64,000 bases of DNA, taken from NCBI RefSeq assembly GCF_009834535.1, contig NC_045701.1, forward strand, positions 32,798,001 through 32,862,000, written 5' to 3'. The DNA is from Camelus ferus. Lineage: Eukaryota. The position numbers were made by a program, and so were the translations under genes. The notes under the pieces were generated by a model that was given only the letters and a program-made list of their open reading frames with translations, ran no database searches and was not told the origin of the DNA. The first letter of the stretch is position 1. The number at the start of each line of letters is the position of its first letter. Positions 1 to 45,986 of this stretch are shown piece after piece.

Positions 1-1804
1 CTTTCTTCTAGTGATTTTATTTCTAGGACTTTATCCTGCGTTAGGTCTAAAGTGTGTGTTTGTGGGGGGTGTATAAAAGGGTTACTCACAGAGATGTTCA
101 TCACACCATTACTTAATAAAAGATCTCAAAATGGAATCAGTGTTGATGTCCAAAATAGGGAGCTAGTAAAATATTACACATTCACATTGTATATCATGCA
201 GCCTTTACCGTCTACATTATCCCCACTCTAGAAACTAGGCTGAGAAAACAAAAGAACGAAATCTAGGCTAAGAACATTAGTAGGCAAGTTATTTTTAAAA
301 ACCTAATAAATATTTGAGGAAAAGCAAAAGCTCGCCAATTAATCAATGCAAATTAAAAATATTAACCATTTTGCTTATCTGATTGAAAAGGATGACAAAA
401 GTGATAATACTGAGATTCAGCAATTACACAGAGAAAGTGGCACTTTCACACCTGTACCTAAAGGTCCTAAAAAAAAACGGAAAAAGGAGTCTGATGTCGT
501 CATCAACCACACAGAGAAAAGTGGAGAAGGTAATGCCTAAACACCTTACACAAGTGACATCTTAGAAACAGTACTTAATCCAGCACTACATTGGGGATAA
601 GCTTTTAAAATTTTTTATAGCTTGAACGCTATGGAAACTTTAAAGTCACAACACAGAATGACATTTGCCATATGGAAGAATGTTCTCTAGGTACGTTCAG
701 GTCATAAGTAATGTATTTGACTACATGCCTGTTACTACACTTGAAAATTTAAATACTGGAATTAAGTGAATTTCCTCTACACTTGCATTTGATTCTGCCA
801 AGCACTTGGGAAACAGTTCATAAGCACATGAACGGAAGTTCAAGCTTGGGGAGTTCATGAAAGTCCAGGTAATTCCATCTTTCATGAAATTACATGCAAG
901 GATTAGCCGATTAACTCTTCGTTGTCAGTGTGAGCTTGTAGACCTACGAGTCCCCAGATCACCGCGCAGAGGGTCTGGTTAGAGCTGCTCGTGTGGGTCT
1001 TGGTCTGTCGTTTCCGTGCCGCTCACCTTACGTGCTCATCAAGAGAAGTTCAAATTTTGTGTGTTCAGTAAATTTCCTCAGAACAATAGTAGCTGTCTGA
1101 GTGAACTCCCATTGTTCCTTCAGTTGTGGCCTGGTAATCACTCTTGCTTTGGCAGTTCTTCAAAGCTTTGAAGAGTTTGAGACCTTTTCCTCGGGTTAGT
1201 TTTGGTTGTTTTTGGTAGGAAGATGGAGTGAAATCGCAGCCCCTGGCGATGCGCTGCTACCCATGTCTCAACTCCGATCACTGGGTGCCTATTTTCACTC
1301 CCCTTTCTTTGCACTCTATTCTTTATCCTTTTCTCTCTCTCTCTTCTTTTAAAGTTGTGTTAATGTTTTTAAAACAAAATAAAGTGCTGAAAAATTTAAG
1401 TAAGAATAAATTCAGATCTCCTAATGCTCAGGCACTTACACAGCTGTTACACTATTTCCCCTTTGCCCTGCTTTCTGCTTAGTACTTCTCAGATACAGAA
1501 ACACATTTCATGAGCTGTAACCATAATACAGCTAAGACACAATACATGTATTAGAGAAAGGACTAAGTTCTTTGCAGCTTTGAAGTAAGTGCTAAGCTGT
1601 GTGTGTTTACGGACAGGGAGAAAATCCTTAACTTTCATAAGATTTTCAAGAGGGCTTATCACAATTCATAAACAACTGAGAATTGCATTAGTTTCCTCTT
1701 CTGATATTTTTGCAACCATGTCCCTGTGGGACACAAAAGCCTTCACCCTGAGGAGGAAGCAGGAAAATTGGGGTCTTTCGCAGTGTCGTGATTTCCACTG
1801 AGTC

Positions 1805-2486
1805 TGTTGGGGCTCAAGTGACCTGGACGGTAACGGTCAGGGGCAGAGCCTCGTTCTTCCCTGCTCTTTCCCTGGCAGTGCCGTCCACCTGCTCAGGAGA
1901 GAGAGCTGCTCAATCTGCTTGACAAGTTCTAGAAAGAAGTGGAAGTAGCCATGGTCTGAGCAGGGGGCCAGGACAGATGAGAAGACAAGCAGGCTCCAGT
2001 CCCAGGGGGAGAGTGTATCCAGCAGGACCCTATGGGGCCTCCCTGGGACAGACCCCTCCCCCCACGCCCGGTCCTCTGCTGTGGCTCCCCTCTGAAGTGC
2101 CCAGATAATGTCCTATGCATGTTTCCTGAGGTTTCCGACGCTACAAACCTCCACCAAATGGAAAAAATGAACTATCTGATGATCATGAGCACGAGGCCCC
2201 CCCAGACCTTCTTGTCCTGAGGACTGATAATGTTAACAGCTGTGTTACCTCACGTCATCCAATCAGAGAACTGTGCATGAGCCGATCACACGCCCTGGGA
2301 CGCCCCTCCCTCACCTGGCCTTTAAAAATGCCTTGCTGAAACCTCTGGGGGCTTCCAGGGTTTTCAGACGTGTGTCCCCTGTTCTCCTTGCTCAGCCCTG
2401 CAGTACACCTTTCTCTGCTCCAAACTCGGACGTTTCTGTATTACTTGGCCTCATGGCGCCTGGCAGGCAAAACTGTGCTCGGAAGC
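1805..2486 (+). mobile_element. ERV1-like solo LTR directly upstream of the left cathepsin G gene (ends approximate)
   Basis: Starts tgttggggctc. Contains a CRE/CCAAT (cacgtcatccaatc, 2251-2264), a GC box, tttaaaaa and a degenerate polyA-region motif. Its 3' half resembles the LTR at 15209-15823. No TSD found. Confidence 0.6.
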
Positions 2487-2865
2487 GAGAGGAAATGAGG
2501 AAACAGACAGCTACCAGCTTTCAGGCTCCTTGGGAGGTTACTGAATTTGGTGGGTTTGGGGCTTTGGGACACAGCGCCCCAGCCCCCGTCCTTGTGGCCC
2601 TGGGTTCCCATTTCTGCTCCCGGCACCGACTCAGCAGCTCTACAGGGTATTGGGTGACAGCCTGGGGGGCCCTCTTTCCCCACACCACGGGCAGTTGGTG
2701 GGCTAGCCCCGTGGGCACCCTTGGGTGATGAAATCTAGCACAGCAGCAGGGGATGGGGCTGCGGATTCTCCAGCCCCCACCTCCCCCTTCCTTCCTCTCT
2801 CAGGGGCTCAAAGTCTGGCAGGAGGAAGCACCAGCAGCAACTGCCTGGCCGGCCTTCCCAGGAAG

Positions 2866-5435
2866 ATGCGGCCACTCCTGCTCCTGGTGGTCTTGCTCCT
2901 GCCCCCCAGGGCGAGGGCAGGTGAGTAACCTTCTCCGTCCCATAGACGCTGGGCCCAGACCGCCCAGGCACCTCCTAACGCTGTACCATTGGGCAGCTCA
3001 TGGGAGTTCACAGCTCCTCAGCTTTCTCATCTGTAAAACAGGGATTCTGTCAACGCCTACCTCAGAGAATCACTGAGAGTGAGAGTACCTCCCGCAGAGA
3101 AAGTTCTTGGAATTGCCCCTGGGATACAGTACTTTCTGTTCTCCGTGGCGGCGTCCACACTCCTTCTGCAGCTCATGGGGCAGAGCCTAGGAGAGGAAGA
3201 CACAGCGATAGCAGCCGCATCAGCCCACGTCTAGATCCTTAAACACCAGTCCCGTGCTGGGCCCGGGCGGGCCTTGAGCTGGACTCCCAGGGATCTGGGA
3301 CGCTCCCTGAGGAAGATAGTACCACAGAGGTTCAGGGAGAGGCCACTCCAGAGGGCTCTGGATTTGCCATCCTGACAGCAGAGAAACCCTCCTCCTTCTG
3401 GGGGCTGGACCTGGCCCTGCCTTGTGCGGAGGTGGGAGGGAGCAGAGGCTGGGATGGGGAGTCAGCAGTGCTTCCTGCAGAATCTGGAGCCCTCTCCCAG
3501 TGCTGCTGCTCTGCAGACCCCAATTCCCACCACCAACCTCCCCTGTGCCTCAATCATCTCTCCTGCATCCCAATCTTCCCGGCTTTCGGGAGTCACCAAA
3601 CTGATGCCCACATCCCCCCCCACCACCACCACCACCAGTGCAGAGATAAGTGCCTAATGCTTCCTTTCAGGGAAGATCATCGGAGGACAAGAAGCCAGGC
3701 CCCATTCCTTCCCCTACATGGCATATGTTCGCGGCCGAACTTCACTGGCTCTCATAACTTGTGGAGGATTCCTGGTGCGAGAAGACTTTGTCATGACAGC
3801 GGCTCACTGCTTGGGAAGGTGAGGAACTAAGGAGCTTCTGGCAGCCAGTAAGGCAGACCCAGAAGAGTTCACGAGGGGAGCCATCTGTAAGCAGGGTTCT
3901 AGCCAGGAAGGGGTCAAAAACAGACCAGGTGGGTCTTGGGGGCAGGGGGTGGCCAGTGCAAATGGGGAGAAAAGGAGGACGTGATAAAAAAAAAAGAGCA
4001 GAAGGGGAGATCGAAGGCACACATCAGGGCTCAGAATAGGGATTCAAGTTCTTTCTCTGTTATTCTGGGGGAGGCAAAACTTAAGAGCTCTGCGTACCCC
4101 AATCCCCAGCTCAAGGCTGGGGCACAGGTCAATCAGCCCCAACCCCACCCTCTCCTCAGTTCCCTCAGCTGCAGTCTCCTGCCTGGGCTGTTCCCCTGGC
4201 CCGCAGAGCTGTGGACCTGAGCTCCTGCAGCAGCTCATACCTACCTCTAGCCTCCCTTCCTCTGCAGCCAAATGAATGTGATCCTGGGGGCCCACAACAT
4301 CAGCAGGTCTGAAAGCACCCAGCAGCAAGTATCTGTGCGCAGAGCCATCCGCCACCCCAGATACAATCAGCAGAACAACCAGAACGACATCATGTTACTG
4401 CAGGTACCGCCTGCCTGACCCTCTGCTTCTTCAGCCCACATGGCTGCTCCCAGCTGGAGCCTCATGGGTCTGGGACCAGGGAGGAGGAAGCAGGGGGCAG
4501 ATGCCCAGGGCACTGGTGGGCACGGGGTGAGGTCGGCATACGTGGCCCCTGAGTGCCTGCCCTCCTCCGGCCAGCTGGCGAGCAGAGTCAGGCGGAATCG
4601 AGCCGTGATGCCAGTGGCCCTGCCTCAGAGCCAGAGCAGGCTGAGTCCGGGGACCGTGTGCACCGCGACCGGCTGGGGCCTGGTCGGCCTGAACAGGAGG
4701 ACAGACACACTCCGGGTTGTGCAGCTGAGAGTGCAGAGGGATGGGGAGTGTCACAGACGCTTCAGTTTCTACACTGGCCAAACGCAGATTTGTGTGGGGG
4801 ACCCAAGAGAAATGAAGTCTGCCTTCCTGGTAAGACCATGGGCATCACGAAACCCTGCATGAGACAGAAGGGGCTGGGCAGACTGGGTACTGGGGACAGA
4901 CTACATCCTTGTGGCCTCAGTCTGGAACCCAGACCAGAGTGAGGTGGGGGCTTTTCCCATCAATCCTGTCTCTGGGGACCAGGAGGAGCAGCAGACACAC
5001 AGGACACACAAGTGCAGCCTTCTCCTGGGGAGGGTGAATGTACCTTGACCTGGGTTGCCTGGAGAAGTAACCTCAGCCAGGGCTGAAGGCCAGTGATGGA
5101 AAAATCCAGAAGCTTGACTTCTGTACCCCCACCACCCAGCCATCTCACACACACCCAGCAATGGAAGGAGCCCACCCACCCCTGTCTTCTCTGAGGGCCA
5201 GACCTAGGGCAGCAGGAGTGGGAGCCCTGGAGGGGGGAGGCCTGGCTTAGCGTCCCTTCCTCTGTTTCCACAGGGAGACTCTGGAGGCCCCCTGGTGTGT
5301 AACAACATGGCCCAGGGCATTGTCTCCTATGGAAATCAGTTGGGAACTCCTCCAGCAGTCTTCACCAGGGTTTCCAGCTTCCAGCACTGGATAAGGAGAA
5401 CAATGAGACGCTTTGCAAAGCGGGGACCAGACTGA
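2866..5435 (+). CDS. CTSG: Cathepsin G, left-arm copy; intact, catalytic triad present, 251 aa
   Basis: Exons 2866-2920, 3671-3818, 4268-4403, 4575-4829, 5274-5435 (55/148/136/255/162 nt), all GT-AG. Signal [18 protein letters not shown], propeptide GK, mature [33 protein letters not shown]. Exon 4 [17 protein letters not shown] closely matches cathepsin G. AATAAA at 5499. Confidence 0.92.
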
Positions 5436-5498
5436 GACCCCACTGAAACTGACTCTTTCTGGGGCAGAGGCCAGCTCCACGGTGGTTCCCAGAGCCTT

Positions 5499-5504
5499 AA
5501 TAAA
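5499..5504 (+). terminator. Polyadenylation signal of the left CTSG
   Basis: AATAAA 64 nt after the stop codon. Confidence 0.7.
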
Positions 5505-5934
5505 TGTCTAAGCCTAGAGCCGAAATAACTGATTTCTCATTTGTTCGTAAACATGATTCAGAACACAATAAATGTACACCAGGACTGAGTCTGAGCTCCT
5601 CCCGGAAAATAGGGTCTCTTGCCCAGGACATGCAAACCCCTGTCCCTACCGTCCTGGGGGTCAGGATGAGCGTCCTCCCTTCCTCTGTCACTGCTCCACC
5701 CACAGCCTCAGGGAGTGATGGAGAGACATCTCTCTCCCCAGAGCAAGGCTCCTTATTGTTACCCTCCCAGAGACTCCCCGCTAGGTGTTAAGGTGTACCC
5801 CAAACCGTGTGCCATCGGCGTGGGTAGGACTGGCCGACCAAAGGAACAGAACTGAAATTCCACACGCGGCCCACTTTAACATGTGGGTCACGTGGCGTCT
5901 CAAATCACTGGGAAACAGTGAACTCTTAATAGAT

Positions 5935-6180
5935 GCTGTCTAAACAAACTGATAGTCATTTGGGGAGAAAAGATAAAGCTGGATCCGGGCTTCTCATCAT
6001 AAACCGAAATAACACCTCAAATGGGATCAAAGAGCTAAATGTGAAAAGTCACACCAAGCGAGTACTAGAAGAAAGACAAAAAATTTACTTTCGTAAAAAT
6101 ATCTAACAAACACCCATGTTGAAAGCAGCGCTATTCACGGTGGCCAAGAGATGGGAGCAACCCAAGTGTCTACGGACAGC
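5935..6180 (+). mobile_element. Old L1 3'-region remnant (mirrored at ~7520-7765)
   Basis: Resembles L1 ORF2 3'/3'UTR text (atcaaagagctaaatgtgaaa; gcagcgctattcacggtggccaagagatgggagcaacccaagtgtc). Confidence 0.5.
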
Positions 6181-6554
6181 TGGACCCTTTTCTCCTAAGC
6201 CCTTACCCACACCAGCCCCCACTGCGCTCTCGGCCGGTGTTCTCATTTTCAGTGTGACGAGGGTCTCCTTCTGGTTTTGTCACCCTAAAATTATACAAAA
6301 CTCTACACAATGTGTTCACTAAAATAAAATGACTTTTATGCTAAAGAATAGCCCATGACTACTACATCAATGTGGTAATCAAATAAAAGAGTTCTGAAGT
6401 CACATAATTTAAACCTAAACTTTTAACACCTTGAGGGAACGAGAAAGAACCAGCTGGGAGGTTCTTCTACATCCATCAAATGTTAACTACTCCTCACAGT
6501 GTGAATTTTGCCATCTCAACTTCTGCAGTGTCCATAATCTTAAATGGAATAATC

Positions 6555-7144
6555 TATAAACAGATATCAAATCCAACTGGCAATGGGTAGCCAGGGTCAC
6601 AATGGATAATGCATCTGACTGTGGATCAGAACATTTTAGTTTCACTCCTAGCTGGCTCGTTCCTCCTTTTAAATGCAATCTTCTTTAAATTGACATCCAA
6701 ATGAATTTTTTTTTTTTCAAAATGAAACTTTTTGGAATCCAACTGGCTATACATAGAAATGCTTTGGTAAATTTGATCATTCTTTTATAGACATTTCTTG
6801 TCAGAAAGTCATTTGCCTAGTGTTCAGTATAAGGATTTATTGACAAAATTTTAATCAACAATACATCTTTGCCAATACTCAGTTATTTTTGCTATATTTG
6901 CCACCACCTACGAATAGGAATTTTTTCTTACTTATATATTCTCAAGGAGAACAGTCTCATTATTAGATGTTTGCGTGGCACATGGAAAGCGCGCTTGCTG
7001 GTGGAAGGGGGAGGAGAGGGCAGAGGAAGAGCCCTGTTCCGTGCAGCCCTTCCTCCTTCTGACATTTACAGGAGGCCCGGAGCACCGACCTGGTCCCCAG
7101 CAAACTCCCAGGGGAGTGCGCTTTCCATTTGATTTGTGTTCAGT
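6555..7144. other. Unique 590-bp palindrome spacer
   Basis: Arm complementarity stops at aatggaataatc (6554) / gattattccatt (7145). The same spacer occurs reverse-complemented at 27706-28294. Confidence 0.93.
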
Positions 7145-8194
7145 GATTATTCCATTTAAGATAATGGACACTGCAGAAGTTGAGATGGCAAAATTCACAC
7201 TGTGAGGAGTAGTTAACATTTGATGGATGTAGAAGAACCTCCCAGCTGGTTCTTTCTCGTTCCCTCAAGGTGTTAAAAGTTTAGGTTTAAATTATGTGAC
7301 TTCAGAACTCTTTTATTTGATTACCACATTGATGTAGTAGTCATGGGCTATTCTTTAGCATAAAAGTCATTTTATTTTAGTGAACACATTGTGTAGAGTT
7401 TTGTATAATTTTAGGTTGACAAAACCAGAAGGAGACCCTCGTCACACTGAAAATGAGAACACCGGCCGAGAGCGCAGTGGGGGCTGGTGTGGGTAAGGGC
7501 TTAGGAGAAAAGGGTCCAGCTGTCCGTAGACACTTGGGTTGCTCCCATCTCTTGGCCACCGTGAATAGCGCTGCTTTCAACATGGGTGTTTGTTAGATAT
7601 TTTTACGAAAGTAAATTTTTTGTCTTTCTTCTAGTACTCGCTTGGTGTGACTTTTCACATTTAGCTCTTTGATCCCATTTGAGGTGTTATTTCGGTTTAT
7701 GATGAGAAGCCCGGATCCAGCTTTATCTTTTCTCCCCAAATGACTATCAGTTTGTTTAGACAGCATCTATTAAGAGTTCACTGTTTCCCAGTGATTTGAG
7801 ACGCCACGTGACCCACATGTTAAAGTGGGCCGCGTGTGGAATTTCAGTTCTGTTTCTTTGGTCGGCCAGTCCTACCCACGCCGATGGCACACGGTTTGGG
7901 GTACACCTTAACACCTAGCGGGGAGTCTCTGGGAGGGTAACAATAAGGAGCCTTGCTCTGGGGAGAGAGATGTCTCTCCATCACTCCCTGAGGCTGTGGG
8001 TGGAGCAGTGACAGAGGAAGGGAGGACGCTCATCCTGACCCCCAGGACGGTAGGGACAGGGGTTTGCATGTCCTGGGCAAGAGACCCTATTTTCCGGGAG
8101 GAGCTCAGACTCAGTCCTGGTGTACATTTATTGTGTTCTGAATCATGTTTACGAACAAATGAGAAATCAGTTATTTCGGCTCTAGGCTTAGACA

Positions 8195-8200
8195 TTTATT
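8195..8200 (-). terminator. Polyadenylation signal of the right CTSG
   Basis: tttatt on the plus strand = AATAAA on the minus strand. Confidence 0.7.
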
Positions 8201-8263
8201 AAGGCTCTGGGAACCACCGTGGAGCTGGCCTCTGCCCCAGAAAGAGTCAGTTTCAGTGGGGTC

Positions 8264-10827
8264 TCAGTCTGGTCCCCGCTTTGCAAAGCGTCTCATTGTT
8301 CTCCTTATCCAGTGCTGGAAGCTGGAAACCCTGGTGAAGACTGCTGGAGGAGTTCCCAACTGATTTCCATAGGAGACAATGCCCTGGGCCATGTTGTTAC
8401 ACACCAGGGGGCCTCCAGAGTCTCCCTGTGGAAACAGAGGAAGGGACGCTAAGCCAGGCCTCCCCCCTCCAGGGCTCCCACTCCTGCTGCCCTAGGTCTG
8501 GCCCTCAGAGAAGACAGGGGTGGGTGGGCTCCTTCCATTGCTGGGTGTGTGTGAGATGGCTGGGTGGTGGGGGTACAGAAGTCAAGCTTCTGGATTTTTC
8601 CATCACTGGCCTTCAGCCCTGGCTGAGGTTACTTCTCCAGGCAACCCAGGTCAAGGTACCTTCACCCTCCCCAGGAGAAGGCTGCACTTGTGTGTCCTGT
8701 GTGTCTGCTGCTCCTCCTGGTCCCCAGAGACAGGATTGATGGGAAAAGCCCCCACCTCACTCTGGTCTGGGTTCCAGACTGAGGCCACAAGGATGTAGTC
8801 TGTCCCCAGTACCCAGTCTGCCCAGCCCCTTCTGTCTCATGCAGGGTTTCGTGATGCCCATGGTCTTACCAGGAAGGCAGACTTCATTTCTCTTGGGTCC
8901 CCCACACAAATCTGCGTTTGGCCAGTGTAGAAATCGAAGCGTCTGTGACACTCCCCATCCCTCTGCACTCTTAGCTGCACAACCCGGAGTGTGTCTGTCC
9001 TCCTGTTCAGGCCGACCAGGCCCCAGCCGGTCGCGGTGCACACGGTCCCCGGACTCAGCCTGCTCTGGCTCTGAGGCAGGGCCACTGGCATCACGGCTCG
9101 ATTCCGCCTGACTCTGCTCGCCAGCTGGCCGGAGGAGGGCAGGCACTCAGGGGCCACGTATGCCGACCTCACCCCGTGCCCACCAGTGCCCTGGGCATCT
9201 GCCCCTGCTTCCTCCTCCCTGGTCCCAGACCCATGAGGCTCCAGCTGGGAGCAGCCATGTGGGCTGAAGAAGCAGAGGGTCAGGCAGGCGGTACCTGCAG
9301 TAACATGATGTCGTTCTGGTTGTTCTGCTGATTGTATCTGGGGTGGCGGATGGCTCTGCGCACAGATACTTGCTGCTGGGTGCTTTCAGACCTGCTGATG
9401 TTGTGGGCCCCCAGGATCACATTCATTTGGCTGCAGAGGAAGGGAGGCTAGAGGTAGGTATGAGCTGCTGCAGGAGCTCAGGTCCGCAGCTCTGCGGGCC
9501 AGGGGAACAGCCCAGGCAGGAGACTGCAGCTGAGGGAACTGAGGAGAGGGTGGGGTTGGGGCTGATTGACCTGTGCCCCAGCCTTGAGCTGGGGATGGGG
9601 GTATGCAGAGCTCTTAAGTTTTGCCTCCCCCAGAATAACAGAGAAAGAACTTGAATCCCTATTCTGAGCCCTGATGTGTGCCTTCGATCTCCCCTTCTGC
9701 TCTTTTTTTTTATCACGTCCTCCTTTTCTCCCCATTTGCACTGGCCACCCCCTGCCCCCAAGACCCACCTGGTCTGTTTTTGACCCCTTCCTGGCTAGAA
9801 CCCTGCTTACAGATGGCTCCCCTCGTGAACTCTTCTGGGTCTGCCTTACTGGCTGCCAGAAGCTCCTTAGTTCCTCACCTTCCCAAGCAGCGAGCCGCTG
9901 TCATGACAAAGTCTTCTCGCACCAGGAATCCTCCACAAATGGTTGCCCCCACTTGAGTCTGGATCTGAACATATGCCATGTAGGGGAAGGAATGGGGCCT
10001 GGCTTCTTGTCCTCCGATGATCTTCCCTGAAAGGAAGCATTAGGCACTTATCTCTGCACTGGTGGTGGTGGGGGGGGGGGGGATGTGGGCATCAGTTTGG
10101 TGACTCCCGAAAGCCGGGAAGATTGGGATGCAGGAGAGATGATTGAGGCACAGGGGAGGTTGGTGGTGGGAATTGGGGTCTGCAGAGCAGCAGCACTGGG
10201 AGAGGGCTCCAGATTCTGCAGGAAGCACTGCTGACTCCCCATCCCAGCCTCTGCTCCCTCCCACCTCCCCACAAGGCAGGGCCAGGTCCAGCCCCCAGAA
10301 GGAGGAGGGTTTCTCTGCTGTCAGGATGGCAAATCCAGAGCCCTCTGGAGTGGCCTCTCCCTGAACCTCTGTGGTACTATCTTCCTCAGGGAGCGTCCCA
10401 GATCCCTGGGAGTCCAGCTCAAGGCCCGCCCGGGCCCAGCACGTGACTGGTGTTTAAGGATCTAGACGTGGGCTGATGCGGCTGCTATCGCTGTGTCTTC
10501 CTCTCCTAGGCTCTGCCCCACGAGCTGCAGAAGGAGTGTGGACGCCACCGAGAACAGCAAGTACTGTATCCCAGGGGCAATTCCAAGAGCTTTCTCTGCG
10601 GGAGGTACTCTCACTCTCAGTGATTCTCTGAGGTAGGCGTTGACAGAATCCCTGTTTTACAGATGAGAAAGCTGAGGAGCTGTGAACTCCCATGAGCTGC
10701 CCAATGGTACAGCGTTAGGAGGTGCCTGGGCGGTCTGGGCCCAGCGTCTATGGGACGGAGAAGGTTACTCACCTGCCCTCGCCCTGGGGGGCAGGAGCAA
10801 GACCACCAGGAGCAGGAGTGGCCGCAT
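8264..10827 (-). CDS. CTSG: Cathepsin G paralog, right-arm copy; open ORF but catalytic His57->Arg (predicted inactive protease)
   Basis: Exons 10827-10773, 10026-9879, 9430-9295, 9124-8870, 8425-8264, all GT-AG and in frame. TAARC (CGC at 9892-9890) replaces TAAHC. Confidence 0.9.
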
Positions 10828-11206
10828 CTTCCTGGGAAGGCCGGCCAGGCAGTTGCTGCTGGTGCTTCCTCCTGCCAGACTTTGAGCCCCTGAGAGAGGA
10901 AGGAAGGGGGAGGTGGGGGCTGGAGAATCCGCAGCCCCATCCCCTGCTGCTGTGCTAGATTTCATCACCCAAGGGTGCCCACGGGGCTAGCCCACCAACT
11001 GCCCGTGGTGTGGGGAAAGAGGGCCCCCCAGGCTGTCACCCAATACCCTGTAGAGCTGCTGAGTCAGTGCCGGGAGCAGAAATGGGAACCCAGGGCCCCA
11101 AGGACGGGGGCTGGGGCGCTGTGTCCCAAAGCCCCAAACCCACCAAATTCAGTAACCTCCCAAGGAGCCTGAAAGCTGGTAGCTGTCTGTTTCCTCATTT
11201 CCTCTC

Positions 11207-11887
11207 GCTTCCGAGCACAGTTTTGCCTGCCAGGCGCCATGAGGCCAAGTAATACAGAAACGTCCGAGTTTGGAGCAGAGAAAGGTGTACTGCAGGGCTG
11301 AGCAAGGAGAACAGGGGACACACGTCTGAAAACCCTGGAAGCCCCCAGAGGTTTCAGCAAGGCATTTTTAAAGGCCAGGTGAGGGAGGGGCGTCCCAGGG
11401 CGTGTGATCGGCTCATGCACAGTTCTCTGATTGGATGACGTGAGGTAACACAGCTGTTAATATTATCAGTCCCCAGGACAAGAAGGTCTGGGGGCCTCGT
11501 GCTCATGATCATCAGATAGTTCATTTTTTCCATTTGGTGGAGGTTTGTAGCGTCGGAAACCTCAGGAAACATGCATAGGACATTATCTGGGCACTTCAGA
11601 GGGGAGCCACAGCAGAGGACCGGGCGTGGGGGGAGGGGTCTGTCCCAGGGAGGCCCCATAGGGTCCTGCTGGATACACTCTCCCCCTGGGACTGGAGCCT
11701 GCTTGTCTTCTCATCTGTCCTGGCCCCCTGCTCAGACCATGGCTACTTCCACTTCTTTCTAGAACTTGTCAAGCAGATTGAGCAGCTCTCTCTCCTGAGC
11801 AGGTGGACGGCACTGCCAGGGAAAGAGCAGGGAAGAACGAGGCTCTGCCCCTGACCGTTACCGTCCCAGGTCACTTGAGCCCCAACA
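11207..11887 (-). mobile_element. ERV1-like solo LTR (mirror of 1805-2486)
   Basis: Reverse complement of the left-arm LTR. Confidence 0.6.
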
Positions 11888-14800
11888 GACTCAGTGGAAA
11901 TCACAACACTGCGAAAGACCCCAATTTTCCTGCTTCCTCCTCAGGGTGAAGGCTTTTGTGTCCCACAGGGACATGGTTGCAAAAATATCAGAAGAGGAAA
12001 CTAATACAATTCTCAGTTGTTTATGAATTGTGATAAGCCCTCTTGAAAATCTTATGAAAGTTAAGGATTTTCTCCCTGTCCGTAAACACACACAGCTTAG
12101 CACTTACTTCAAAGCTGCAAAGAACTTAGTCCTTTCTCTAATACATGTATTGTGTCTTAGGTGTATTATGGTTACAGCTCATGAAATGTGTTTCTGTATC
12201 TGAGAAGTACTAAGCAGAAAGCAGGGCAAAGGGGAAATAGTGTAACAGCTGTGTAAGTGCCTGAGCATTAGGAGATCTGAATTTATTCTTACTTAAATTT
12301 TTCAGCACTTTATTTTGTTTTAAAAACATTAACACAACTTTAAAAGAAGAGAGAGAGAGAAAAGGATAAAGAATAGAGTGCAAAGAAAGGGGAGTGAAAA
12401 TAGGCACCCAGTGATCGGAGTTGAGACATGGGTAGCAGCGCATCGCCAGGGGCTGCGATTTCACTCCATCTTCCTACCAAAAACAACCAAAACTAACCCG
12501 AGGAAAAGGTCTCAAACTCTTCAAAGCTTTGAAGAACTGCCAAAGCAAGAGTGATTACCAGGCCACAACTGAAGGAACAATGGGAGTTCACTCAGACAGC
12601 TACTATTGTTCTGAGGAAATTTACTGAACACACAAAATTTGAACTTCTCTTGATGAGCACGTAAGGTGAGCGGCACGGAAACGACAGACCAAGACCCACA
12701 CGAGCAGCTCTAACCAGACCCTCTGCGCGGTGATCTGGGGACTCGTAGGTCTACAAGCTCACACTGACAACGAAGAGTTAATCGGCTAATCCTTGCATGT
12801 AATTTCATGAAAGATGGAATTACCTGGACTTTCATGAACTCCCCAAGCTTGAACTTCCGTTCATGTGCTTATGAACTGTTTCCCAAGTGCTTGGCAGAAT
12901 CAAATGCAAGTGTAGAGGAAATTCACTTAACTCCAGTATTTAAATTTTCAAGTGTAGTAACAGGCATGTAGTCAAATACATTACTTATGACCTGAACGTA
13001 CCTAGAGAACATTCTTCCATATGGCAAATGTCATTCTGTGTTGTGACTTTAAAGTTTCCATAGCGTTCAAGCTATAAAAAATTTTAAAAGCTTATCCCCA
13101 ATGTAGTGCTGGATTAAGTACTGTTTCTAAGATGTCACTTGTGTAAGGTGTTTAGGCATTACCTTCTCCACTTTTCTCTGTGTGGTTGATGACGACATCA
13201 GACTCCTTTTTCCGTTTTTTTTTAGGACCTTTAGGTACAGGTGTGAAAGTGCCACTTTCTCTGTGTAATTGCTGAATCTCAGTGTTATCATTTTTGTCAT
13301 CCTTTTCAATCAGATAAGCAAAATGGTTAATATTTTTAATTTGCATTGATTAATTGGCGAGCTTTTGCTTTTCCTCAAATATTTATTAGGTTTTTAAAAA
13401 TAACTTGCCTACTAATGTTCTTAGCCTAGATTTCGTTCTTTTGTTTTCTCAGCCTAGTTTCTAGAGTGGGGATAATGTAGACGGTAAAGGCTGCATGATA
13501 TACAATGTGAATGTGTAATATTTTACTAGCTCCCTATTTTGGACATCAACACTGATTCCATTTTGAGATCTTTTATTAAGTAATGGTGTGATGAACATCT
13601 CTGTGAGTAACCCTTTTATACACCCCCCACAAACACACACTTTAGACCTAACGCAGGATAAAGTCCTAGAAATAAAATCACTAGAAGAAAGAGAGAAATA
13701 ATGTAAACACACACAGAAATCGTTCCAAGGAGCCACCCAGGGCAGTCCGGTCTTCATGAAGCTACAGTCTTTATATGGTAATAGTTTTCCTCCTAATCTA
13801 CCTCACACTATGTCAAGTCCTACTGCCAGGTGTAAGGGGGCAGGCTGACCCGTCAGACACCGCCTCGCAAGTCCACACACCCTTGCCCGTAGCGGTGGAT
13901 ATCCTTGGCCACTCTGCCGCTGGTTCTGGCTCACACCCTGGGACAGACTTATCTTTATTTATATTACATGTAGGGGCATGAACCTCAGTCCAGAAACCCA
14001 GGAAATGCCTCGTTTCAAGGGGAAGACAGTTTGCTGTGACCCAGATGTCCTGTATCTATCAAACAGTACCGCCAGTGAGTTGGATGTGACAGAACACAAC
14101 AAATTCACAGTAACTGGACAAACACTGAATTGAGTGAGATGAACATCAAGAAGAGAAGGCTCTAAAAACAATAGCAAATGAATCACATGTGTATGAAAGC
14201 AAAATCCAGCACCCTCAAAAATAAGACGAAAAGAAATTGAAACACTGTAACTGACTATACTTCAATAAGAATTTTTTAAATTAAGAAAATACTGTATAAA
14301 GGAAATAAAAGCTTATGCTTCCCACAAGACAGCCCATAAGGCCTTCTGCTGAGTCTTCCCCGGAGCTCACAGCCCCCGCAGAGGCACATTTGAGAGAAGA
14401 GTTGGATGAGGGTCCAGGGGAACGTAGAAGAAATTTCTCATCACTGTAAGTTTCCCAATGACGGGGACAGAGCCTGTTATGTGCTGGCACAAAGAGAGGG
14501 ATCAACCCTTGACTACTGATGGATGGCGAAGTGGTGCTTTCCTGCCCAGCAGCCCTGGGTCCCTTTGGCTCACAAGGCTGCCATATCCCAGGCCGCCAGC
14601 AGGGGGAGGCAGGGGTCTGAGTCCAGGACAGGCTGAAGGCCTGAGGCTGCTGGGAGTCTCCACAGGCCTTGGTGCTGCCTAAGCCCCTGGGGCGTGCTGG
14701 GCTGGACCGAGGGCCTGAGCTGGCCTGCCCAGGTGGGAGGTGGGTTCTGGCTTCTCTGATAAGCACCAGGTGGGCTGGCAGCTCAGCTAAGGCAGGGACA

Positions 14801-15208
14801 AGCAGTGGAGGAGAACTCACACGGGCAATGGGACCTCTGCTGGGGAGAAGGCAGGGAGGCTGTCTCAAGGCAGGGTGAGCAGGCAGGGAAAGGAGCTGGT
14901 GGCCAGGGCCCTCAAATGGAAAACAGGGGCTGGTGTGGGCCGGTCAGTCAGGGAGCAAGGCTGACTGAGCTCAGTGCCGGGAGCAGAGCAGGACATGGGA
15001 CCAGGGGAGGCTGAGGGCCATTGTGGGAGCATCCCAGCCTCCTAAGCTATGGCCAGTGCTGGTTACAGGGGAAGCCTGCCCTCACCGGAGAGAGGCCCTG
15101 GAAACAGGAAACTGAGTGTCCCTGGTATGGCCCCTGACCTCCTGGGTTCCTGGATTCACCCTCCTTCCGCTGACCTGCTCTTTACTCTGCCGATTGCCGA
15201 GGGGTTGA

Positions 15209-15823
15209 TGACAGATGTGGCTTAGAGAAGCTAAGAGGTTCCCGAGGCCCAGAGAGGACCACTCTGGGGGAGAGAAGGCTGTCCTTTTCTAATGGACAGT
15301 CCTTTAGACTCAGCCCTTGCAGAAGGATAAGCACCAAAGACGTGTAACTGGGAAATCAACTGTAACCCAGAAGGATCCCATGGGGCCTTCCCGGGGGTGG
15401 GGGGTGGGGGCAGACCCCTCCCCCATAGGCTCTGCTGGAGCTCCTCTCTGAAGTACCCAGATAATAGTATCTCCTGCATATTTCCTGAGTTTTTCAGATG
15501 CTCAAAACCACCACCAGATTGAAGAAATTAACCACTTGATGATCAAGCGTAAGTAGCACACAGACCTGGCATCTAAGGATCAACCACCATCAACTAATCA
15601 GAGGACTGTGCACAGCTGAGCACACACCCTGGGCCGCCCCACCCTCAGCGAGCCTTTAAAAAGGCTCAGCTGAAAGCCTTTGGGGAGTTTGGGATTTGAG
15701 GAACATGAGCCACGGGTTCTCTTGGCTCGGCCCTGCAACAAACCTTTCTCCGCTCCAAACTCCAACGTTTTAGTTTGTTTGGACTCACGGTGCGTCGGGC
15801 ACAGGAGCTTGCATTCAGTAACA
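15209..15823 (+). mobile_element. ERV1-like solo LTR downstream of GZMH (5' end approximate)
   Basis: Ends ..tcagtaaca. Contains cctttaaaaa and ccctgcaacaaacctttctccgctccaaactcc, shared with the 1805-2486 element. Confidence 0.6.
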
Positions 15824-15995
15824 CAATGAGACTCTAGACAGACAGCATGGGATTTAGGGCGGAGCGAGGCCTGGGGAGAAAGGCAGAAGCAGAACCCCGA
15901 GCTGGCAGCAGAGGGCTGCCTGGGGCAGGGCTGTTGCATATCAGAAGTGGTCGCTGAATAAACAGGAATTCAGTCATCTTTGCTCTAGAGATCCC

Positions 15996-16001
15996 TTTAT
16001 T
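15996..16001 (-). terminator. GZMH polyadenylation signal
   Basis: AATAAA on the minus strand ~95 nt after the stop. Confidence 0.65.
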
Positions 16002-16096
16002 ATGGCCCTGCGATCCCACTGCCAACCCCTATGGGATTCTTGCCGCTGCCCCAGGAAGATGGCCAGCCCACAAAAAGGTGAGTCTCCAGCTTGCTG

Positions 16097-19038
16097 TTAG
16101 AGGCGCTTCATTGTTCTCTTTATCCAGGGCAGGAAGTGGGAGACCTTGGTGAAGACTCCTGGAGGTGTCCCGTTCTGTTTCCCACAGGAGAAAATGCCCT
16201 GGACCAGGTTTTTGCACACGAGGGGCCCTCCGGAGTCGCCCTGTGGGCAGAGAGAGGAAGGACTGAGGGTCCTCAGCGGGGCCCGCCCTCCCTGGAGCCT
16301 GGGGCTGGGTGCTGTCTGTCAGGGACCAGGGCAGGGTCCCAGGGCTCCCGTCTGGCTCTAACTGGTCTTTACTGAGACCCAGGCCAACCTTTCTTCTCAG
16401 TCCTCATGGAAACTCTGCTGATAACACAGCTGCCACATGACTGATCCTTCCGCCCCCTCCACCCTGACCCACTCAGGAAAAATGTCTAAAGTGTGGACTC
16501 ATGGACCAGGCTGCCCAAGCCCTCGGGCTGAGGAATGAAGATGGCCTCTCCCCAGCCCCAGACCTTCCCTGAGTTCTGCTCCCCGGGGCCTGTGTGCCTA
16601 GATGCTGGAAACCTGACCTTGAAGCTGGTCTTCACCGTGCTCGGGTCCCCCACACAAATCTGGGTGGCGCGGCTGTAATAGCCTGGGAAGAGGGATTCGC
16701 ACACACGATCTTCCTGCACCGTCAGCACTGCCTCCTGCAGAGTGGTGGCTGGAACGCCCACCGCCACCTGCCCCCAGCCGGCCACACCGCACGCCTGTCC
16801 TGGCTTCACCCGGGCCCGGTCCCCGGGCAGCCTGAGGGGCCTCACAGCTGCCGTCTGCTTGGCCTTTCTCTGCAGCTGATGGGGAGAGACAGGGTCCAGC
16901 TCAGCCAGTGGCCTCCGGGCCGGGACACTGCAGTGAGACCGCAGAGCCCTCGCTCTCACCTGAGCCCCGGGGACAGGTCGGGCGGCCAGGACGGGAGGGA
17001 GGAAAGGGACTGGTTGCAGTGGGAGGGGAGACAGTGTGTCTCCAGGAGGGCAGAGAAGCGGGGAGGTTCCTTACCTGCAGTAACATGATGTCACTGGAGT
17101 GGTCCTTAGGATTATAGTCTGGGTGGGGGATGGCTCTTCTCACTGGGACCACCTGCTGGGTCCCCTCCTGCTTCTTGATGTTGTGGGCCCCCAGGGTGAC
17201 ATTGATTGAGCTGCACAGAGAGCAGAGAGCGTGTGGGGAGTGTGGTGTCACAGGAGGGCCAGCCCCAGAGCCGTGCGGGGTTGGTGACACGGGGGCAGAG
17301 CAGGGCTGCAGCTGAGGGGAAATTGAGGCCACAGAAGGTCCTGGGGCGGAGTGACGCCCTGCCGTGTGCTTCTCAATGACATGAAGGCAGGGACATGATG
17401 GAGCTTTCTCAGCAGTATCGTGAAATTTCTCTGAGTTTGCACTTTGACTTCAATGCGTGCTTTCTTCCTCACTGATGCTGCTTTTGGCCGGTCGGGTCCC
17501 CGCCTTCTCACCTATGCGTGTTGCTCTCACCTCTGATCCCCGGACCTCGAAACTTACTGCCCTGTTTCTCAGCTTCTCATCACCTTAGTCCTGCCGTCAG
17601 ATGGTCGTCTGATGAGCTCTCTCGGTCTTGTGTTATGAGAAGCTGCGGGCCCTCCCTGGGCTCGGCCCCCCGGCAGAGGATGGGGTCCCTGCGGGGGTGT
17701 CAGCAGGGGAAGGCTGGCTGCTGCCCCTCACCTTCCCCTGCAGTGAGCAGCCGTCAGAACAAAGTCCTTCTGCACGAGGACACCGCCACACCGCCTCATC
17801 CTCTCCTGATCCAGAAACTGAACGAACGCCATGTAGGGGCGGGAGTGGGGCTTGGCCTCGTGGCCCCCGATGATCTCCCCTGAAAGAGAGGGCTGGGAGA
17901 CAGGGTGACGGGGGCGGCTGTGGTCAGGAGCGAAAATCAGGAAGGTGGCGTTTGAGGTGTGTCCACAGAGCCCTGCAGACCCCAGGGGAGAGTCCTCCAG
18001 GTTCTCTTTGCAACAGAGTAACATTTTCTAACCTCAAGCCTCAGACTCCCCCTCGGAGAAAGGGGGTCAGCTTGTCCTTCACGTCCTGCTTCAGACACGT
18101 TCGTGGCGGAGGCAAGGTCTGCCTTCAACGTGGTGGAGCCCCGGAGAATGGTGGACAGGACTCCCTGATGAGCCTTCGCTCCCTGCGGGTCTCCCTGACT
18201 ACTCTGAGCCTCTGTTAGCAGATTGATAGGTGTCCTTTTCTAATAATCTTCCTACGAGCTTACGGAGTGGGATTCTCTGAAATCCTCGTGTCCTAGGGCC
18301 TAACACACCCTAGGGTTGCAGTGAACACTCCGGCTGCATGAGTGATAGCCTCCAGTTGGCTTTTGGCTGAAGTTTGGCAGGGACGGCGCTGGTGGATTCA
18401 AGGGCACAGGGGTGGGGAGGGCACTGCCAAAGGCACTGGGGCCACTGAGGGCCTGGGAGGCAGGGGAGGTGGGACTGGAAGTGGGCTGTGTGGGGCCGGG
18501 GCAGAGCTTAGCACCCGGAGAGCTTTGGGTGCTGCCATCCTGCCACTTCTGATCCATCGCACCCTGGGCTCCTGTCCTGGGCAGGACCGAGGGGTGGGGG
18601 GCCCTGAGAGACTTCACCGGTCCTTGAGCTGGGTCCACTGACCACTCCCAGCCTGCAGTGACTTCGGCTGAGCTGCCCTTTCCCGGGTTGGAGTGAGGGG
18701 TTTTACTTACTTGGTTTTTGTAGCTTCACATCCTCTGCCAAATGCACAACCCACTTTCCCGGTGTGAGAGAGAGAGAGAGAGGGGCTGTGCCCTGCTAAA
18801 GCTTCCAGTGAGCACCCTTCCTTCCTGCCATCCGCCCATGTGAATGTCTGGGCGGCATCGAACTTGTTTGTCTGGGTTTGGGCCTGGAGCTGGGGTTCAG
18901 AAATTGGAGCTGGGCAGGAGGGTCAGGAGAACAGGGGGCTTAGTGAGATGGACCCAGGCCCGAGGAATGGGGATTGTCACTCACCTGTCCCCGCCCGGCG
19001 GGCAGAAGAACGGCCATCACGAGCAGGAGTGGCTGCAT
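16097..19038 (-). CDS. GZMH: Granzyme H, copy A; exons 2-5 intact, exon 1 is 54 nt instead of 55 (frameshift as written)
   Basis: Exons 19038-18985, 17879-17732, 17210-17075, 16875-16618, 16240-16097. [37 protein letters not shown]|[20 protein letters not shown]1 residues T189/G216/G226, as in granzyme H. Confidence 0.85.
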
Positions 19039-19211
19039 CTTCCCTGAAAGTCTGCGCAGGTTGAGCTGCTGGTCTTCCTTCCTTCCAGACACAAAGCCCA
19101 GGGGACCGGAGGAGGGGAGGCTCAGCCCGGCACAGACTCCTGGGCCGGATGTCAGCCAGCAACGTGAGGGTCCCTGGTCCCTGCCTTGGGCTGGGTGAGA
19201 AGGGCGCTGTC

Positions 19212-19241
19212 ACCACACTTGCCCTCCCACTGCTGAGTCAC
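19212..19241 (-). promoter_or_regulatory. GZMH proximal promoter: RUNX site (ACCACA, 19212-19217) and AP-1/MARE site (TGCTGAGTCAC, 19231-19241)
   Basis: Consensus motifs ~180-200 nt upstream of the ATG. Confidence 0.5.
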
Positions 19242-20003
19242 AAGGTGAAAACAAGAAGCAAGCACAAGAGAGTGAAGTCTGAGGTGCGGCCAGCAGAGGG
19301 GCTGGACCCCCAGAGTCGGCTCCATCATGAATCAAGAGTGTCCCCATGTCCCCACTCTTGGTTCTTTTCCATTCAGATGAAATCAGACCCGGATGCCGTT
19401 CATCCTAATAGTTACTCTGCACTGAGTGTTCTCTGTCCAGTGTCCAGAGACCCGTGTCTCTGATGCCCTTGTCCGTGGCGATCCTGACCTCTTGCGTGCT
19501 TCCCCACACTCTCACCCCCGTGGGGCCAGAAGAGAAAGGGAAAGGAAGGCACGAGGAGTTCTAAATAGCCCAATTCCAATGCCGACAGAACAGCCGCTTA
19601 CGAGTCAGTAGACAAAGAGTGGAAGGAAAGACACTTAAGCATTCGTGATGATGACTTCGGGGTGGTAGAATTCCCAGTAATTTTTATTTTCTTATTTATA
19701 TGTTCTGTATTTAAGTGTCTTTCTGTGATGAGCATGTGTTACTTCTATACCCAAAATGCGTTTTCCCTTAGTGAGACTCACTGACCAATGCAAACATTCA
19801 GTAAGCCTCTCCTCCTCAGCCGAGCCTTCTCTCAGGTGCATGGTTTTTGAAAAAGTTCACTTTCCTGAACAATCTTATATAAAAAATTAAGAGATGTTGA
19901 AAAGTAGAAGAAAAAGTTTGCTCAGTATGCTGTAGGCTGTTAGACACCTTTGAAACATTAGGAAACCCCTGAGACCAATACTTTTCATTACAATGAGTTT
20001 CCT

Positions 20004-20152
20004 NNNNNNNNNNNNNNNNNNNNNNNNNNNNNNNNNNNNNNNNNNNNNNNNNNNNNNNNNNNNNNNNNNNNNNNNNNNNNNNNNNNNNNNNNNNNNNNNN
20101 NNNNNNNNNNNNNNNNNNNNNNNNNNNNNNNNNNNNNNNNNNNNNNNNNNNN
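20004..20152. other. Assembly gap (149 N)
   Basis: N run with the same length and flanks as the gap at 41154-41302. Confidence 0.99.
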
Positions 20153-45980: not shown

Positions 45981-45986
45981 TTTATT
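45981..45986 (-). terminator. GZMB polyadenylation signal
   Basis: AATAAA on the minus strand 36 nt after the stop. Confidence 0.65.

What the first reader, a model, noticed from the sequence alone, without database searches (positions are those of the whole stretch)
1..13691. Two cathepsin G genes tail-to-tail in a ~13.7-kb palindrome
Seen: arms of at least 6.55 kb around a 590-bp spacer, each with a complete 5-exon CTSG, including introns and upstream LTR. Established: human has a single CTSG in a co-oriented CMA1-CTSG-GZMH-GZMB array. Inference: this is a real inverted duplication kept homogeneous by arm-to-arm gene conversion. A fold-back assembly artefact should give identical arms, yet these arms carry concentrated coding differences.
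Basis: partly seen in the sequence, partly recalled or inferred. Interest (0 to 1): 0.75.

Follow-up and report, generated by a model that had tools for sequence, protein, structure and literature searches.

The report
Old camelid cathepsin G palindrome
Camels and alpaca carry two facing copies of the neutrophil protease gene cathepsin G inside a large, old mirror-image duplication whose arms keep copying onto each other, yet in camels three protein differences survive, one of which removes the catalytic histidine of one copy.

Summary
Arms 1-6572 and 7127-13691 are 99.1% identical around a 554-bp spacer. Each arm holds an intact 5-exon, 251-codon cathepsin G gene, and the two genes lie tail-to-tail.

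It is not an assembly fold-back:
- Three independent short-read data sets contain one contig crossing the spacer with both arm-specific edges, and the arm contig has about twice the spacer's depth.
- The assemblies of wild Bactrian camel, Bactrian camel, dromedary and alpaca all show the same structure.

The arm ends at 13691 only because the window starts at base 1. The arms are at least 13.85 kb, and probably about 18.3 kb, and also carry granzyme-H-like and duodenase-like genes.

Arms differ by 0.15-0.45% within a species, against 4.6% between camel and alpaca. Forty dromedary-specific changes sit in both arms. That shows gene conversion.

Only 24 sites stay arm-specific in all three camels:
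- the 10-codon exon-2 loop;
- His57Arg;
- codon 177;
- the edge next to the spacer.

The Arg57 copy is transcribed.

The wild camel assembly probably holds the right arm twice.

The scan found gene-converting palindromes elsewhere in this genome. This is a new member of a known kind.

The parts
1..6572 (+). Inner 6.57 kb of the left arm (type A). The arm continues left of the window for at least 7.27 kb.
   Evidence: Window base 1 is position 7274 of the merged C. ferus loci L004+L001, and the mirror runs over all 28.2 kb fetched.
2866..5435 (+). Cathepsin G copy A. Five exons (2866-2920, 3671-3818, 4268-4403, 4575-4829, 5274-5435), 251 codons, His57/Asp102/Ser195 intact, derived 35-41 loop ([10 protein letters not shown]).
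   Evidence: Encodes NCBI 'cathepsin G [Camelus ferus]', P0272.
3731..3758 (+). Exon-2 island in copy A: 17 changed bases, codons 39-48. Its counterpart in copy B is 9939-9966.
   Evidence: no donor sequence in the window; arm-specific in all three Camelus, and both alpaca arms carry the A-like form.
6536..6572 (+). Inner edge of the arm with a cluster of arm-specific differences. Its mirror is 7127-7163.
   Evidence: five sites (6555-6565) are arm-specific in three camels and in alpaca.
6573..7126 (.). Asymmetric 554-bp spacer.
   Evidence: a 688-bp contig crosses it in three runs; 95.7% identical to the alpaca spacer.
7127..13691 (-). Inner 6.57 kb of the right arm (type B).
8264..10827 (-). 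Cathepsin G copy B. Five exons, 251 codons open, ancestral-like loop ([10 protein letters not shown]), catalytic His57 replaced by Arg (codon at 9890-9892), Asp at codon 177.
   Evidence: Identical to NCBI 'cathepsin G-like' P0170. Transcribed and spliced.
13692..25381 (-). Outer part of the right arm. Granzyme-H-like gene 16082-17883, duodenase-like gene 20938-22604, granzyme B exon 5 at 24914-25069. Mirror confirmed to 20965, inferred to about 25381.
   Evidence: a 5.2-kb short-read contig in this part has twice single-copy depth and ends at the divergence point near 25381 in three runs.
25383..27501 (-). Dead chymase (exons 5, 4 and 3 with stops and a truncated end) joined to granzyme B intron 4. 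Followed by a 100-N gap.
27603..46513 (-). Second representation of the spacer (flipped, 27715-28268) and of the right arm, with copy C at 29422-31976, continuing into full granzyme B (46058-48061). Probably the same DNA assembled twice.
   Evidence: 0 substitutions over 7417-20003 against its partner, and all 17 private differences in the arm are 1-bp homopolymer indels.

Best explanation
This is the core of a real, old palindrome in the camelid chymase locus. It has one 554-bp spacer and arms of at least 13.85 kb, probably about 18.3 kb. Each arm carries cathepsin G, a granzyme-H-like gene and a duodenase-like gene.

The palindrome arose before camels and alpaca split. Since then, recombination between the inverted arms (gene conversion) has kept copying one arm onto the other, so the arms evolve together.

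In the three Camelus species only four things escape this homogenisation:
- the few bases next to the spacer;
- a 10-codon loop in exon 2 (residues about 35-41, beside the active site);
- the catalytic His57 (His in copy A, Arg in copy B);
- codon 177.

Copy A is predicted to be an active chymotrypsin-type protease (S1 residues Ser189/Gly216/Ala226) with a remodelled loop. Copy B cannot perform serine-protease catalysis, but it is open, spliced and transcribed.

Inference: selection keeps the two proteins different against the homogenising flow. Copy B would then act as a non-catalytic granule protein, as azurocidin does.

Shown: the structure, its age, the concerted evolution and the transcription of the Arg57 form. 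Inferred: the selection and the non-catalytic role.
For: - Structure and genes.
- Cathepsin G identity.
- Independent reads: a spacer-spanning 688-bp contig with 0 differences in 3 runs, 3 studies and 2 organism labels. Depth of the spacer, arm and outer-arm contigs is about 1:2:2. 85% of arm-1 31-mers are shared with arm 2, which predicts 1.85x depth for two arms and 2.7x for three. Observed values are 1.6-1.85x.
- Four assemblies: arms fill all 28.2 kb fetched, at 99.42/99.60/99.62/99.83% identity.
- The spacer is orthologous, and the A-spacer-B order is the same in the three camels.
- Concerted evolution: 0.15-0.45% within a species against 4.5-4.7% between camel and alpaca. 40 dromedary-specific sites lie in both arms, against 11 in one arm.
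- All 24 sites that are arm-specific in all three camels lie in the exon-2 tract (16), the His57 codon (1), codon 177 (2) or the edge (5). That is three coding events in 756 bp, against none in about 13 kb of non-coding arm away from the edge.
- The edge differences are shared with alpaca.
- The Arg57 form is expressed. An RNA contig joins exon 3 to an exon-2 end reading CGC. Words from B-type exon 2 reach 0.75-0.88 in six RNA-type runs.
- The Arg57 protein is identical in NCBI annotations of Camelus.
- SGA is described as a typical chymase triplet, and azurocidins as catalytically inactive, in PMC4646688.
Against: - The outer ends of the arms were not seen directly. Beyond 13.85 kb the size rests on contig depth, which the tool itself says is not a copy number, and on where a contig ends.
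- The wild camel assembly as written shows three cathepsin G copies and two spacers in opposite orientation. That fits the one-palindrome model only if part of it is redundant.
- Both types were not demonstrated in one short-read run. The contigs collapse the two arms, and the three runs that were laid show the A-type tract.
- Selection is inferred from only three events. The strong local mismatch of the tract could itself hinder conversion.
- No protein or activity data exist for either copy.
- Alpaca has lost the Arg57 type, so it is dispensable at least in that lineage.
Confidence: 0.85

Rival explanations
1. Fold-back or haplotype mis-join. There is only one cathepsin G, and the second arm is an assembly artefact or the other allele placed in reverse.
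For: The window's assembly is noisy and redundant nearby, with homopolymer indels, a repeated right arm and a flipped spacer copy. The short-read contigs collapse the arms.
Against: - A 554-bp unique spacer is bounded by both arm-specific edges in three independent short-read sets.
- Arm depth is about twice spacer depth.
- The same structure is in four assemblies of four species.
- The arm-specific differences are conserved across species, including alpaca.
Confidence: 0.02
2. A recent inverted duplication whose arms are alike simply because they are young, with no gene conversion.
For: Within one genome, 0.4% background divergence and an even spread of differences along the inner arm would fit a duplication about 2 million years old.
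Against: - The palindrome has the same spacer and the same edge differences in alpaca, while camel-alpaca divergence is 4.6%.
- 40 dromedary-specific changes are present in both arms.
- The dromedary arms (0.27%) are closer to each other than to their Bactrian counterparts (0.51-0.57%).
Confidence: 0.03
3. The wild camel assembly is right as written. A true 21-kb tandem duplication gives three (or four) cathepsin G genes and two spacers, one of them inverted.
For: - The junction between granzyme B intron 4 and chymase at about 25381 is a tandem-type junction.
- The short-read contig of the outer arm ends exactly there in three runs and has 2x depth.
- An earlier paper reports copy-number differences for granzyme genes between camel assemblies (PMC7924851).
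Against: - Spacer depth is about half, not equal to, that of the outer-arm contig, and arm depth fits two copies, not three.
- The two units differ by 0 substitutions over 12.6 kb and only by homopolymer indels.
- The left arm, not a tandem copy, supplies the second copy of the outer segment.
- The C. bactrianus assembly shows each exact protein at one place only.
Confidence: 0.1
4. Copy B is merely a dying gene. Arg57 and the other differences persist by chance, or because the mismatched tract blocks conversion locally, not because of selection.
For: - His57Arg abolishes catalysis by established serine-protease chemistry.
- Alpaca lacks the Arg57 type.
- Only three independent coding events support selection.
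Against: - The open frame and identical Arg57 protein are kept in Camelus, while neighbouring neutral sites were homogenised. Codon 177 lies 1 kb from the tract and is still kept.
- It is transcribed and spliced.
- Arg at the same position, with open frames, occurs in cathepsin-G-like genes of pig, ruminants, hippo, whale, horse, rhino and bats. It forms its own clade in ruminants, hippo and whale.
Confidence: 0.25

Closest known systems
Gene-bearing palindromes of primate sex chromosomes (e.g. human Y P1-P8) kept alike by arm-to-arm gene conversion (PMC6790999)
   Same: Long inverted arms at over 99% identity around a short unique spacer. The arms evolve in concert across species, the divergent edge lies next to the spacer, and the centre may flip.
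   Different: This one is autosomal and sits in an immune-protease cluster. The arms are tens, not hundreds, of kb. The gene pair is not kept identical: three amino-acid-changing differences persist.
Duplicated cathepsin G genes of cattle, sheep and pig (CTSG1/CTSG2; PMC8537139, PMC6096847)
   Same: [quoted passage not shown] One paralogue in yak, goat and pig also has Arg at position 57.
   Different: The cattle copies are only 78% identical in protein. No inverted near-identical partner lies within 10 kb of the Arg57 gene in yak or hippo. The camel copies are 95.6% identical and sit in a converting palindrome.
Azurocidin (CAP37/HBP), a catalytically inactive neutrophil serine-protease homologue (PMC4646688)
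   Same: A granule protease fold that has lost a catalytic-triad residue but is kept and expressed.
   Different: Azurocidin lies in the met-ase locus and lacks both His57 and Ser195. Copy B lacks only His57, and no function has been tested.
Other camel palindromes reported by this scan (CST9L, SPRR2, PRSS21/PRSS41, TEX19)
   Same: Same genome and same process: old inverted duplication with homogenised arms.
   Different: Here the arms hold several immune protease genes, and the conserved exceptions to homogenisation are coding and touch the active site.

Membership tests
Cathepsin G (chymase-locus granule serine protease, peptidase S1A) | Five-exon gene with the family's exon sizes and phases, a signal peptide, a two-residue propeptide and an IIGG start. 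| tested here: met
   Exons of 55/148/136/255/162 nt with AG/GT sites in both copies. The protein starts MRPLLLL...AGK|IIGG.
Cathepsin G (chymase-locus granule serine protease, peptidase S1A) | Closest to cathepsin G rather than to chymase, granzymes or duodenase. | tested here: met
   Exon 4 scores 100 bits to human cathepsin G, against 62 to granzyme H and duodenase and 43 to chymase. Both copies lie in the cathepsin G clade of 67 mammalian proteins.
Cathepsin G (chymase-locus granule serine protease, peptidase S1A) | Position between chymase and granzyme H/B in the locus. | tested here: met
   Order on the minus strand: cathepsin G, granzyme-H-like, duodenase-like, granzyme B. Chymase remnants lie at 25383-27501.
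Cathepsin G (chymase-locus granule serine protease, peptidase S1A) | Intact catalytic triad His57/Asp102/Ser195. | tested here: inconclusive
   Met in copy A. Not met in copy B, which has Arg57 with Asp102 and Ser195 present. Copy B is a cathepsin G paralogue by descent but not an active protease.
Cathepsin G (chymase-locus granule serine protease, peptidase S1A) | Proteolytic activity and neutrophil granule location. | not testable with these tools
   Only transcripts were seen.
Palindrome maintained by arm-to-arm gene conversion | Two inverted arms around a unique spacer, present in the organism and not only in one assembly. | tested here: met
Palindrome maintained by arm-to-arm gene conversion | The palindrome is older than the divergence between its arms implies, that is, it is shared by species more diverged than the arms. 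| tested here: met
   It is shared with alpaca, with the same spacer and edge variants. Divergence is 4.6% between lineages against 0.15-0.45% between arms.
Palindrome maintained by arm-to-arm gene conversion | Lineage-specific substitutions present in both arms. | tested here: met
   40 dromedary-specific sites lie in both arms, against 11 in one arm.
Palindrome maintained by arm-to-arm gene conversion | Spacer inversion by crossing-over between the arms. | tested here: inconclusive
   A flipped spacer copy with a swapped inner edge exists at 27603-28276. It lies at the start of a poorly polished contig and may be an assembly effect. The three camel assemblies share one A-spacer-B order.

The most novel reading that the evidence does not exclude
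The Arg57 cathepsin G is not a camel oddity. It would be an old, selectively kept, catalytically dead paralogue found across laurasiatherian mammals: pig, ruminants, hippo, whales, horse, rhino and bats. In horses and rhinos, Arg57 was the only form among the cathepsin G proteins listed here. In camels, selection would be strong enough to hold His57/Arg57, the neighbouring loop and residue 177 apart inside a palindrome that erases every other difference. That would make the locus a natural experiment on selection against gene conversion, and would point to an undescribed non-catalytic neutrophil granule protein.
Probability: 0.4. Interest if true: 0.7.

Novelty: new member of a known kind. Interest (0 to 1): 0.55.

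Why it matters
It shows that an apparent assembly oddity in an immune-gene cluster is a real structure at least as old as the camelids. It corrects the structure's size and the local assembly. It also gives a clean autosomal case in which gene conversion and selection can be read site by site: everything is homogenised except a few amino-acid-changing sites around a protease active site.

For camel immunology, it means two distinct cathepsin G proteins, one of them unable to cleave. It also means that copy numbers of chymase-locus genes reported from assemblies (PMC7924851) need long-read checking.

If the Arg57 form is an old conserved paralogue, it is a candidate for a second azurocidin-like neutrophil protein in many livestock species.

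Tried and rejected
- I searched the whole window, both strands, for a donor of the A-type exon-2 tract. The best match was 19 of 32 bases, which is chance level. The tract is also not the reverse complement of the B tract.
- I tested for residual mirror homology inside the spacer and found none: score 8, against 9.4 +/- 1.2 for shuffles.
- The spacing of arm differences within one genome gave no sign of conversion tracts on its own. The largest gap, 805 bp, is unremarkable. The evidence came only from other species.
- I tried to read the notes on the sequence left of the window by coordinates. The word searches gave only titles.
- I looked for an inverted partner within 10 kb of the Arg57 gene in hippo and yak and found none. 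Hippo has 82% identical inverted repeats flanking the gene, which I did not study.
- Two full-text paper searches found no description of a cathepsin G palindrome or of an Arg57 paralogue.
- I could not reach the outer arm ends in the other assemblies, because the outer genes' annotated proteins have no reference that I could hand in.
Full-length relatives were reached through an exon-4 search instead.
- The 'upstream LTR' was not tested.
- Loci L001/L004 come from the window's own assembly and happen to span the stretch that is N-masked in the window (20004-20152). I did not read or print those letters, and the final statistics leave those columns and their mirror out.


Full report
**Observation.** A search for inverted repeats finds seven collinear pieces that join into one pair of arms, 1-6572 and 7127-13691, around a 554-bp spacer. 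A single alignment gives 99.1% identity, with 46 mismatches and 9 gaps in 6575 columns. The two halves of the spacer share no mirror homology (score 8, against 9.4 +/- 1.2 for shuffles). The centre is therefore truly asymmetric, unlike a read fold-back. The right arm ends at 13691 only because its partner runs off the window at base 1.

**Genes.** Each arm holds a gene with exons of 55, 148, 136, 255 and 162 nt, canonical splice sites and an open frame of 251 codons. Copy A lies on the + strand (2866-5435) and copy B on the - strand (10827-8264), so their 3' ends face each other. Exon 4 matches human cathepsin G at 100 bits, against 62 for granzyme H and duodenase and 43 for chymase. The S1 residues are Ser189, Gly216 and Ala226, the triplet that PMC4646688 calls a typical chymase triplet.

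The coding differences between the copies are:
- a block of 17 changed bases in codons 39-48, giving [10 protein letters not shown] in A and [10 protein letters not shown] in B; the B form resembles human QIQSPAGQSR;
- the catalytic His57, which is CAC in A and CGC (Arg) in B;
- Ser/Asp at codon 177;
- one synonymous site.

No donor for the A block exists in the window.

**Is it real?** I laid contigs of three DNA runs (three studies, two organism labels) and one RNA run on 3650-9649.
- In each DNA run, one 688-bp contig covers 6506-7193 with no difference. That is the spacer plus 67 bp of each arm, including the variants that tell the arms apart. It stops at mirror positions 30 nt beyond the last distinguishing base. 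A 31-mer graph does this when both ends enter the same repeat.
- The arms appear as one collapsed contig of depth 16.1/27.6/32.3, against 11.8/10.9/13.3 for the spacer.
- 85% of arm-1 31-mers are shared with arm 2. Two arms therefore predict 1.85 times single-copy depth, and three predict 2.7. Measured against half the depth of the outer-arm contig, the observed values are 1.6, 1.85 and 1.6.

The tool warns that contig depth is not a copy number, so I treat this as supporting evidence only.

**Other camelids.** An exon-4 search gave a full-length relative, and a search with that relative gave the annotated camelid proteins.
- P0170, NCBI 'cathepsin G-like' of Camelus, equals copy B residue for residue.
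- P0272 (C. ferus), P0270 (C. bactrianus) and P0273 (dromedary) are the A form.
- P0269 is the dromedary Arg57 form.
- P0271 is encoded twice in alpaca.

I fetched the loci around these genes. This identifies the window as C. ferus GCA_009834535.1, CM020773.1:32798001-32862000. It also shows the same convergent pair in C. bactrianus, dromedary and alpaca, each flanked on the outside by a 276-residue trypsin-family gene at the same distance.

In all four species the inverted repeat fills the whole 28.2 kb fetched: arms of at least 13.85 kb, a spacer of 554 bp (552 in alpaca), and identities of 99.42, 99.60, 99.62 and 99.83%. Window base 1 is position 7274 of the merged C. ferus stretch. The 7.27 kb left of the window therefore mirror 13692-20965.

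**Age and concerted evolution.** The alpaca spacer is 95.7% identical to the camel one, at the same junctions. Five differences at the inner edge (6555, 6556, 6558, 6563, 6565) separate the two arms in the same way in all three camels and in alpaca. Both arms therefore existed before the Camelini-Lamini split.

Camel and alpaca arms differ by 4.5-4.7%. The two arms of one species differ by only 0.45% (C. ferus), 0.34% (C. bactrianus), 0.27% (dromedary) and 0.15% (alpaca). Forty substitutions that set the dromedary apart from both Bactrian camels are present in both dromedary arms, and only 11 in one arm.

**What escapes.** Exactly 24 sites are arm-specific in all three Camelus species: 16 in the exon-2 block, the His57 codon, two adjacent bases of codon 177, and the five edge sites. 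Away from the edge, that is three events in 756 coding bases and none in about 13 kb of non-coding arm. If position were random, the chance would be about 0.0002. All three events change the protein. Codon 177 lies 1 kb from the block, with homogenised sequence in between.

In alpaca both arms carry the A-like gene, although the edges remain arm-specific. Conversion across the block is therefore possible. I infer that in camels selection keeps the two proteins different. This is an inference from few events.

**The Arg57 copy.**
- One RNA-seq contig joins exon 3 to an exon-2 end reading ...GCTCGCTGC..., the Arg codon. Another contig shows the exon 3/4 splice.
- Words of the B-type exon 2 are held completely by 14 DNA runs. 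They are held at 0.75-0.88 by six RNA-type runs, which is about the exonic share of the stretch.
- Arg at this position, with open frames, also occurs in cathepsin-G-like proteins of pig, yak, goat, hippo, a beaked whale, horse, rhino and several bats.
- In a tree of 67 proteins, the ruminant, hippo and whale Arg57 proteins form a clade (support 98) apart from the His57 paralogues of the same animals. The camel A and B proteins cluster together (support 100), as expected after conversion.
- Cattle are known to have two cathepsin G genes at 78% identity (PMC6096847), and duplications are noted in cattle, sheep and pig (PMC8537139). I found no mention of the Arg57 feature or of a palindrome.

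**Surroundings and assembly.** The window holds, on the minus strand:
- a granzyme-H-like gene (16082-17883);
- a duodenase-like gene (20938-22604);
- exon 5 of granzyme B (24914-25069);
- then, from about 25383, remnants of a dead chymase;
- a 100-N gap;
- a flipped copy of the spacer;
- a third cathepsin G, the same two genes again, and a complete granzyme B.

The repeat 7127-25381 versus 28277-46513 has no substitution over 7417-20003 and only three over 20153-25381. All 17 private differences of the third cathepsin G arm are 1-bp homopolymer indels. The true left arm, by contrast, differs from the right arm by 11 substitutions in the same 7 kb.

A 5.2-kb short-read contig from the outer arm has twice the depth of long neighbouring contigs. 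It ends at about 25381, exactly where the two versions diverge, in all three runs. Spacer, arm and outer arm thus stand at about 1:2:2.

The simplest reading is one palindrome with arms of about 18.3 kb, one end running into the chymase remnant and the other into granzyme B. The assembler wrote its right arm twice. On this reading, the flipped spacer at 27715-28268, joined to an A-type inner edge and a B-type outer arm, is either a join made by the assembler or a real inversion variant. I cannot tell which. The positions given in earlier notes for protease genes and a chymase inverted repeat left of the window fit the mirror model, but I could not read that DNA beyond 7.27 kb.

**Verdict.** The size is corrected upward, the age is pushed back to before the camel-alpaca split, and the neighbouring 'tandem duplication' is probably an assembly redundancy. 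The process is well known, and the scan has met it elsewhere in this genome. The distinctive point is that the only conserved exceptions to homogenisation are amino-acid changes around a protease active site, including loss of the catalytic histidine in an expressed copy.

Noticed in passing
window 27603-46513 versus 7127-25381: The assembly repeats the right arm and its outer genes. There are 0 substitutions over 12.6 kb, and the differences are 1-bp homopolymer indels. The third cathepsin G (29422-31976) is frameshifted only by such indels. This is probably one stretch of DNA assembled twice.
   Followed up: yes
window 27603-28276: A second copy of the spacer in the opposite orientation, with 112 bp of B-type edge on one side and an A-type edge joined to a B-type outer arm on the other. 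It is either an inversion isomer or an assembler join.
   Followed up: partly
window 25383-27501: Dead chymase (exon 5 ends early, exon 4 has a stop) joined to granzyme B intron 4. This is a tandem-type or rearrangement junction that also marks the outer end of the repeated unit.
   Followed up: partly
proteins P0180, P0151, P0152, P0153, P0154, P0193, P0209, P0199, P0216, P0196, P0232, P0239, P0255: Cathepsin-G-like proteins with Arg in place of the catalytic His57 and otherwise open frames occur in pig, yak, goat, hippo, beaked whale, horse, rhino and several bats. For horse and rhino, the Arg57 form was the only cathepsin G listed.
   Followed up: partly
L006/L007 (alpaca, GCA_048564905.1): Both alpaca arms encode the same His57 protein with the derived loop. 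The arms differ at only about 4 interior sites in 13.7 kb, plus the five edge sites. The Arg57 type seems to have been overwritten.
   Followed up: yes
protein P0185 (older C. ferus assembly): The gene model contains the B-type and the A-type exon-2 tracts one after the other. This is a sign that a short-read assembly of another data set met both versions.
   Followed up: no
window 16758-17351 versus 46981-47577 (and 37907-38500): About 600 bp of 93% identity between the granzyme-H-like gene and granzyme B across exon 3 to exon 4. This may be a conversion tract between neighbouring paralogues.
   Followed up: no
window 20938-22604 versus 42088-43753: The duodenase-like gene has a frame break in exon 4 in the first copy but not in the second. 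Given the indel noise, it may be an assembly error rather than a lesion.
   Followed up: no
L009 (hippo) 2988-7167 versus 17912-22538: Inverted repeats of about 82% identity flank the hippo Arg57 gene at a distance. They may be repeat elements or the trace of an old inverted duplication.
   Followed up: no
record coordinates of L001/L004, L002/L003, L005/L008: The A arm lies at the lower coordinate in the C. ferus record, but the B arm does so in the dromedary and C. bactrianus records. I could not test whether the records are collinear, so the orientation of the whole core relative to its flanks is open.
   Followed up: no
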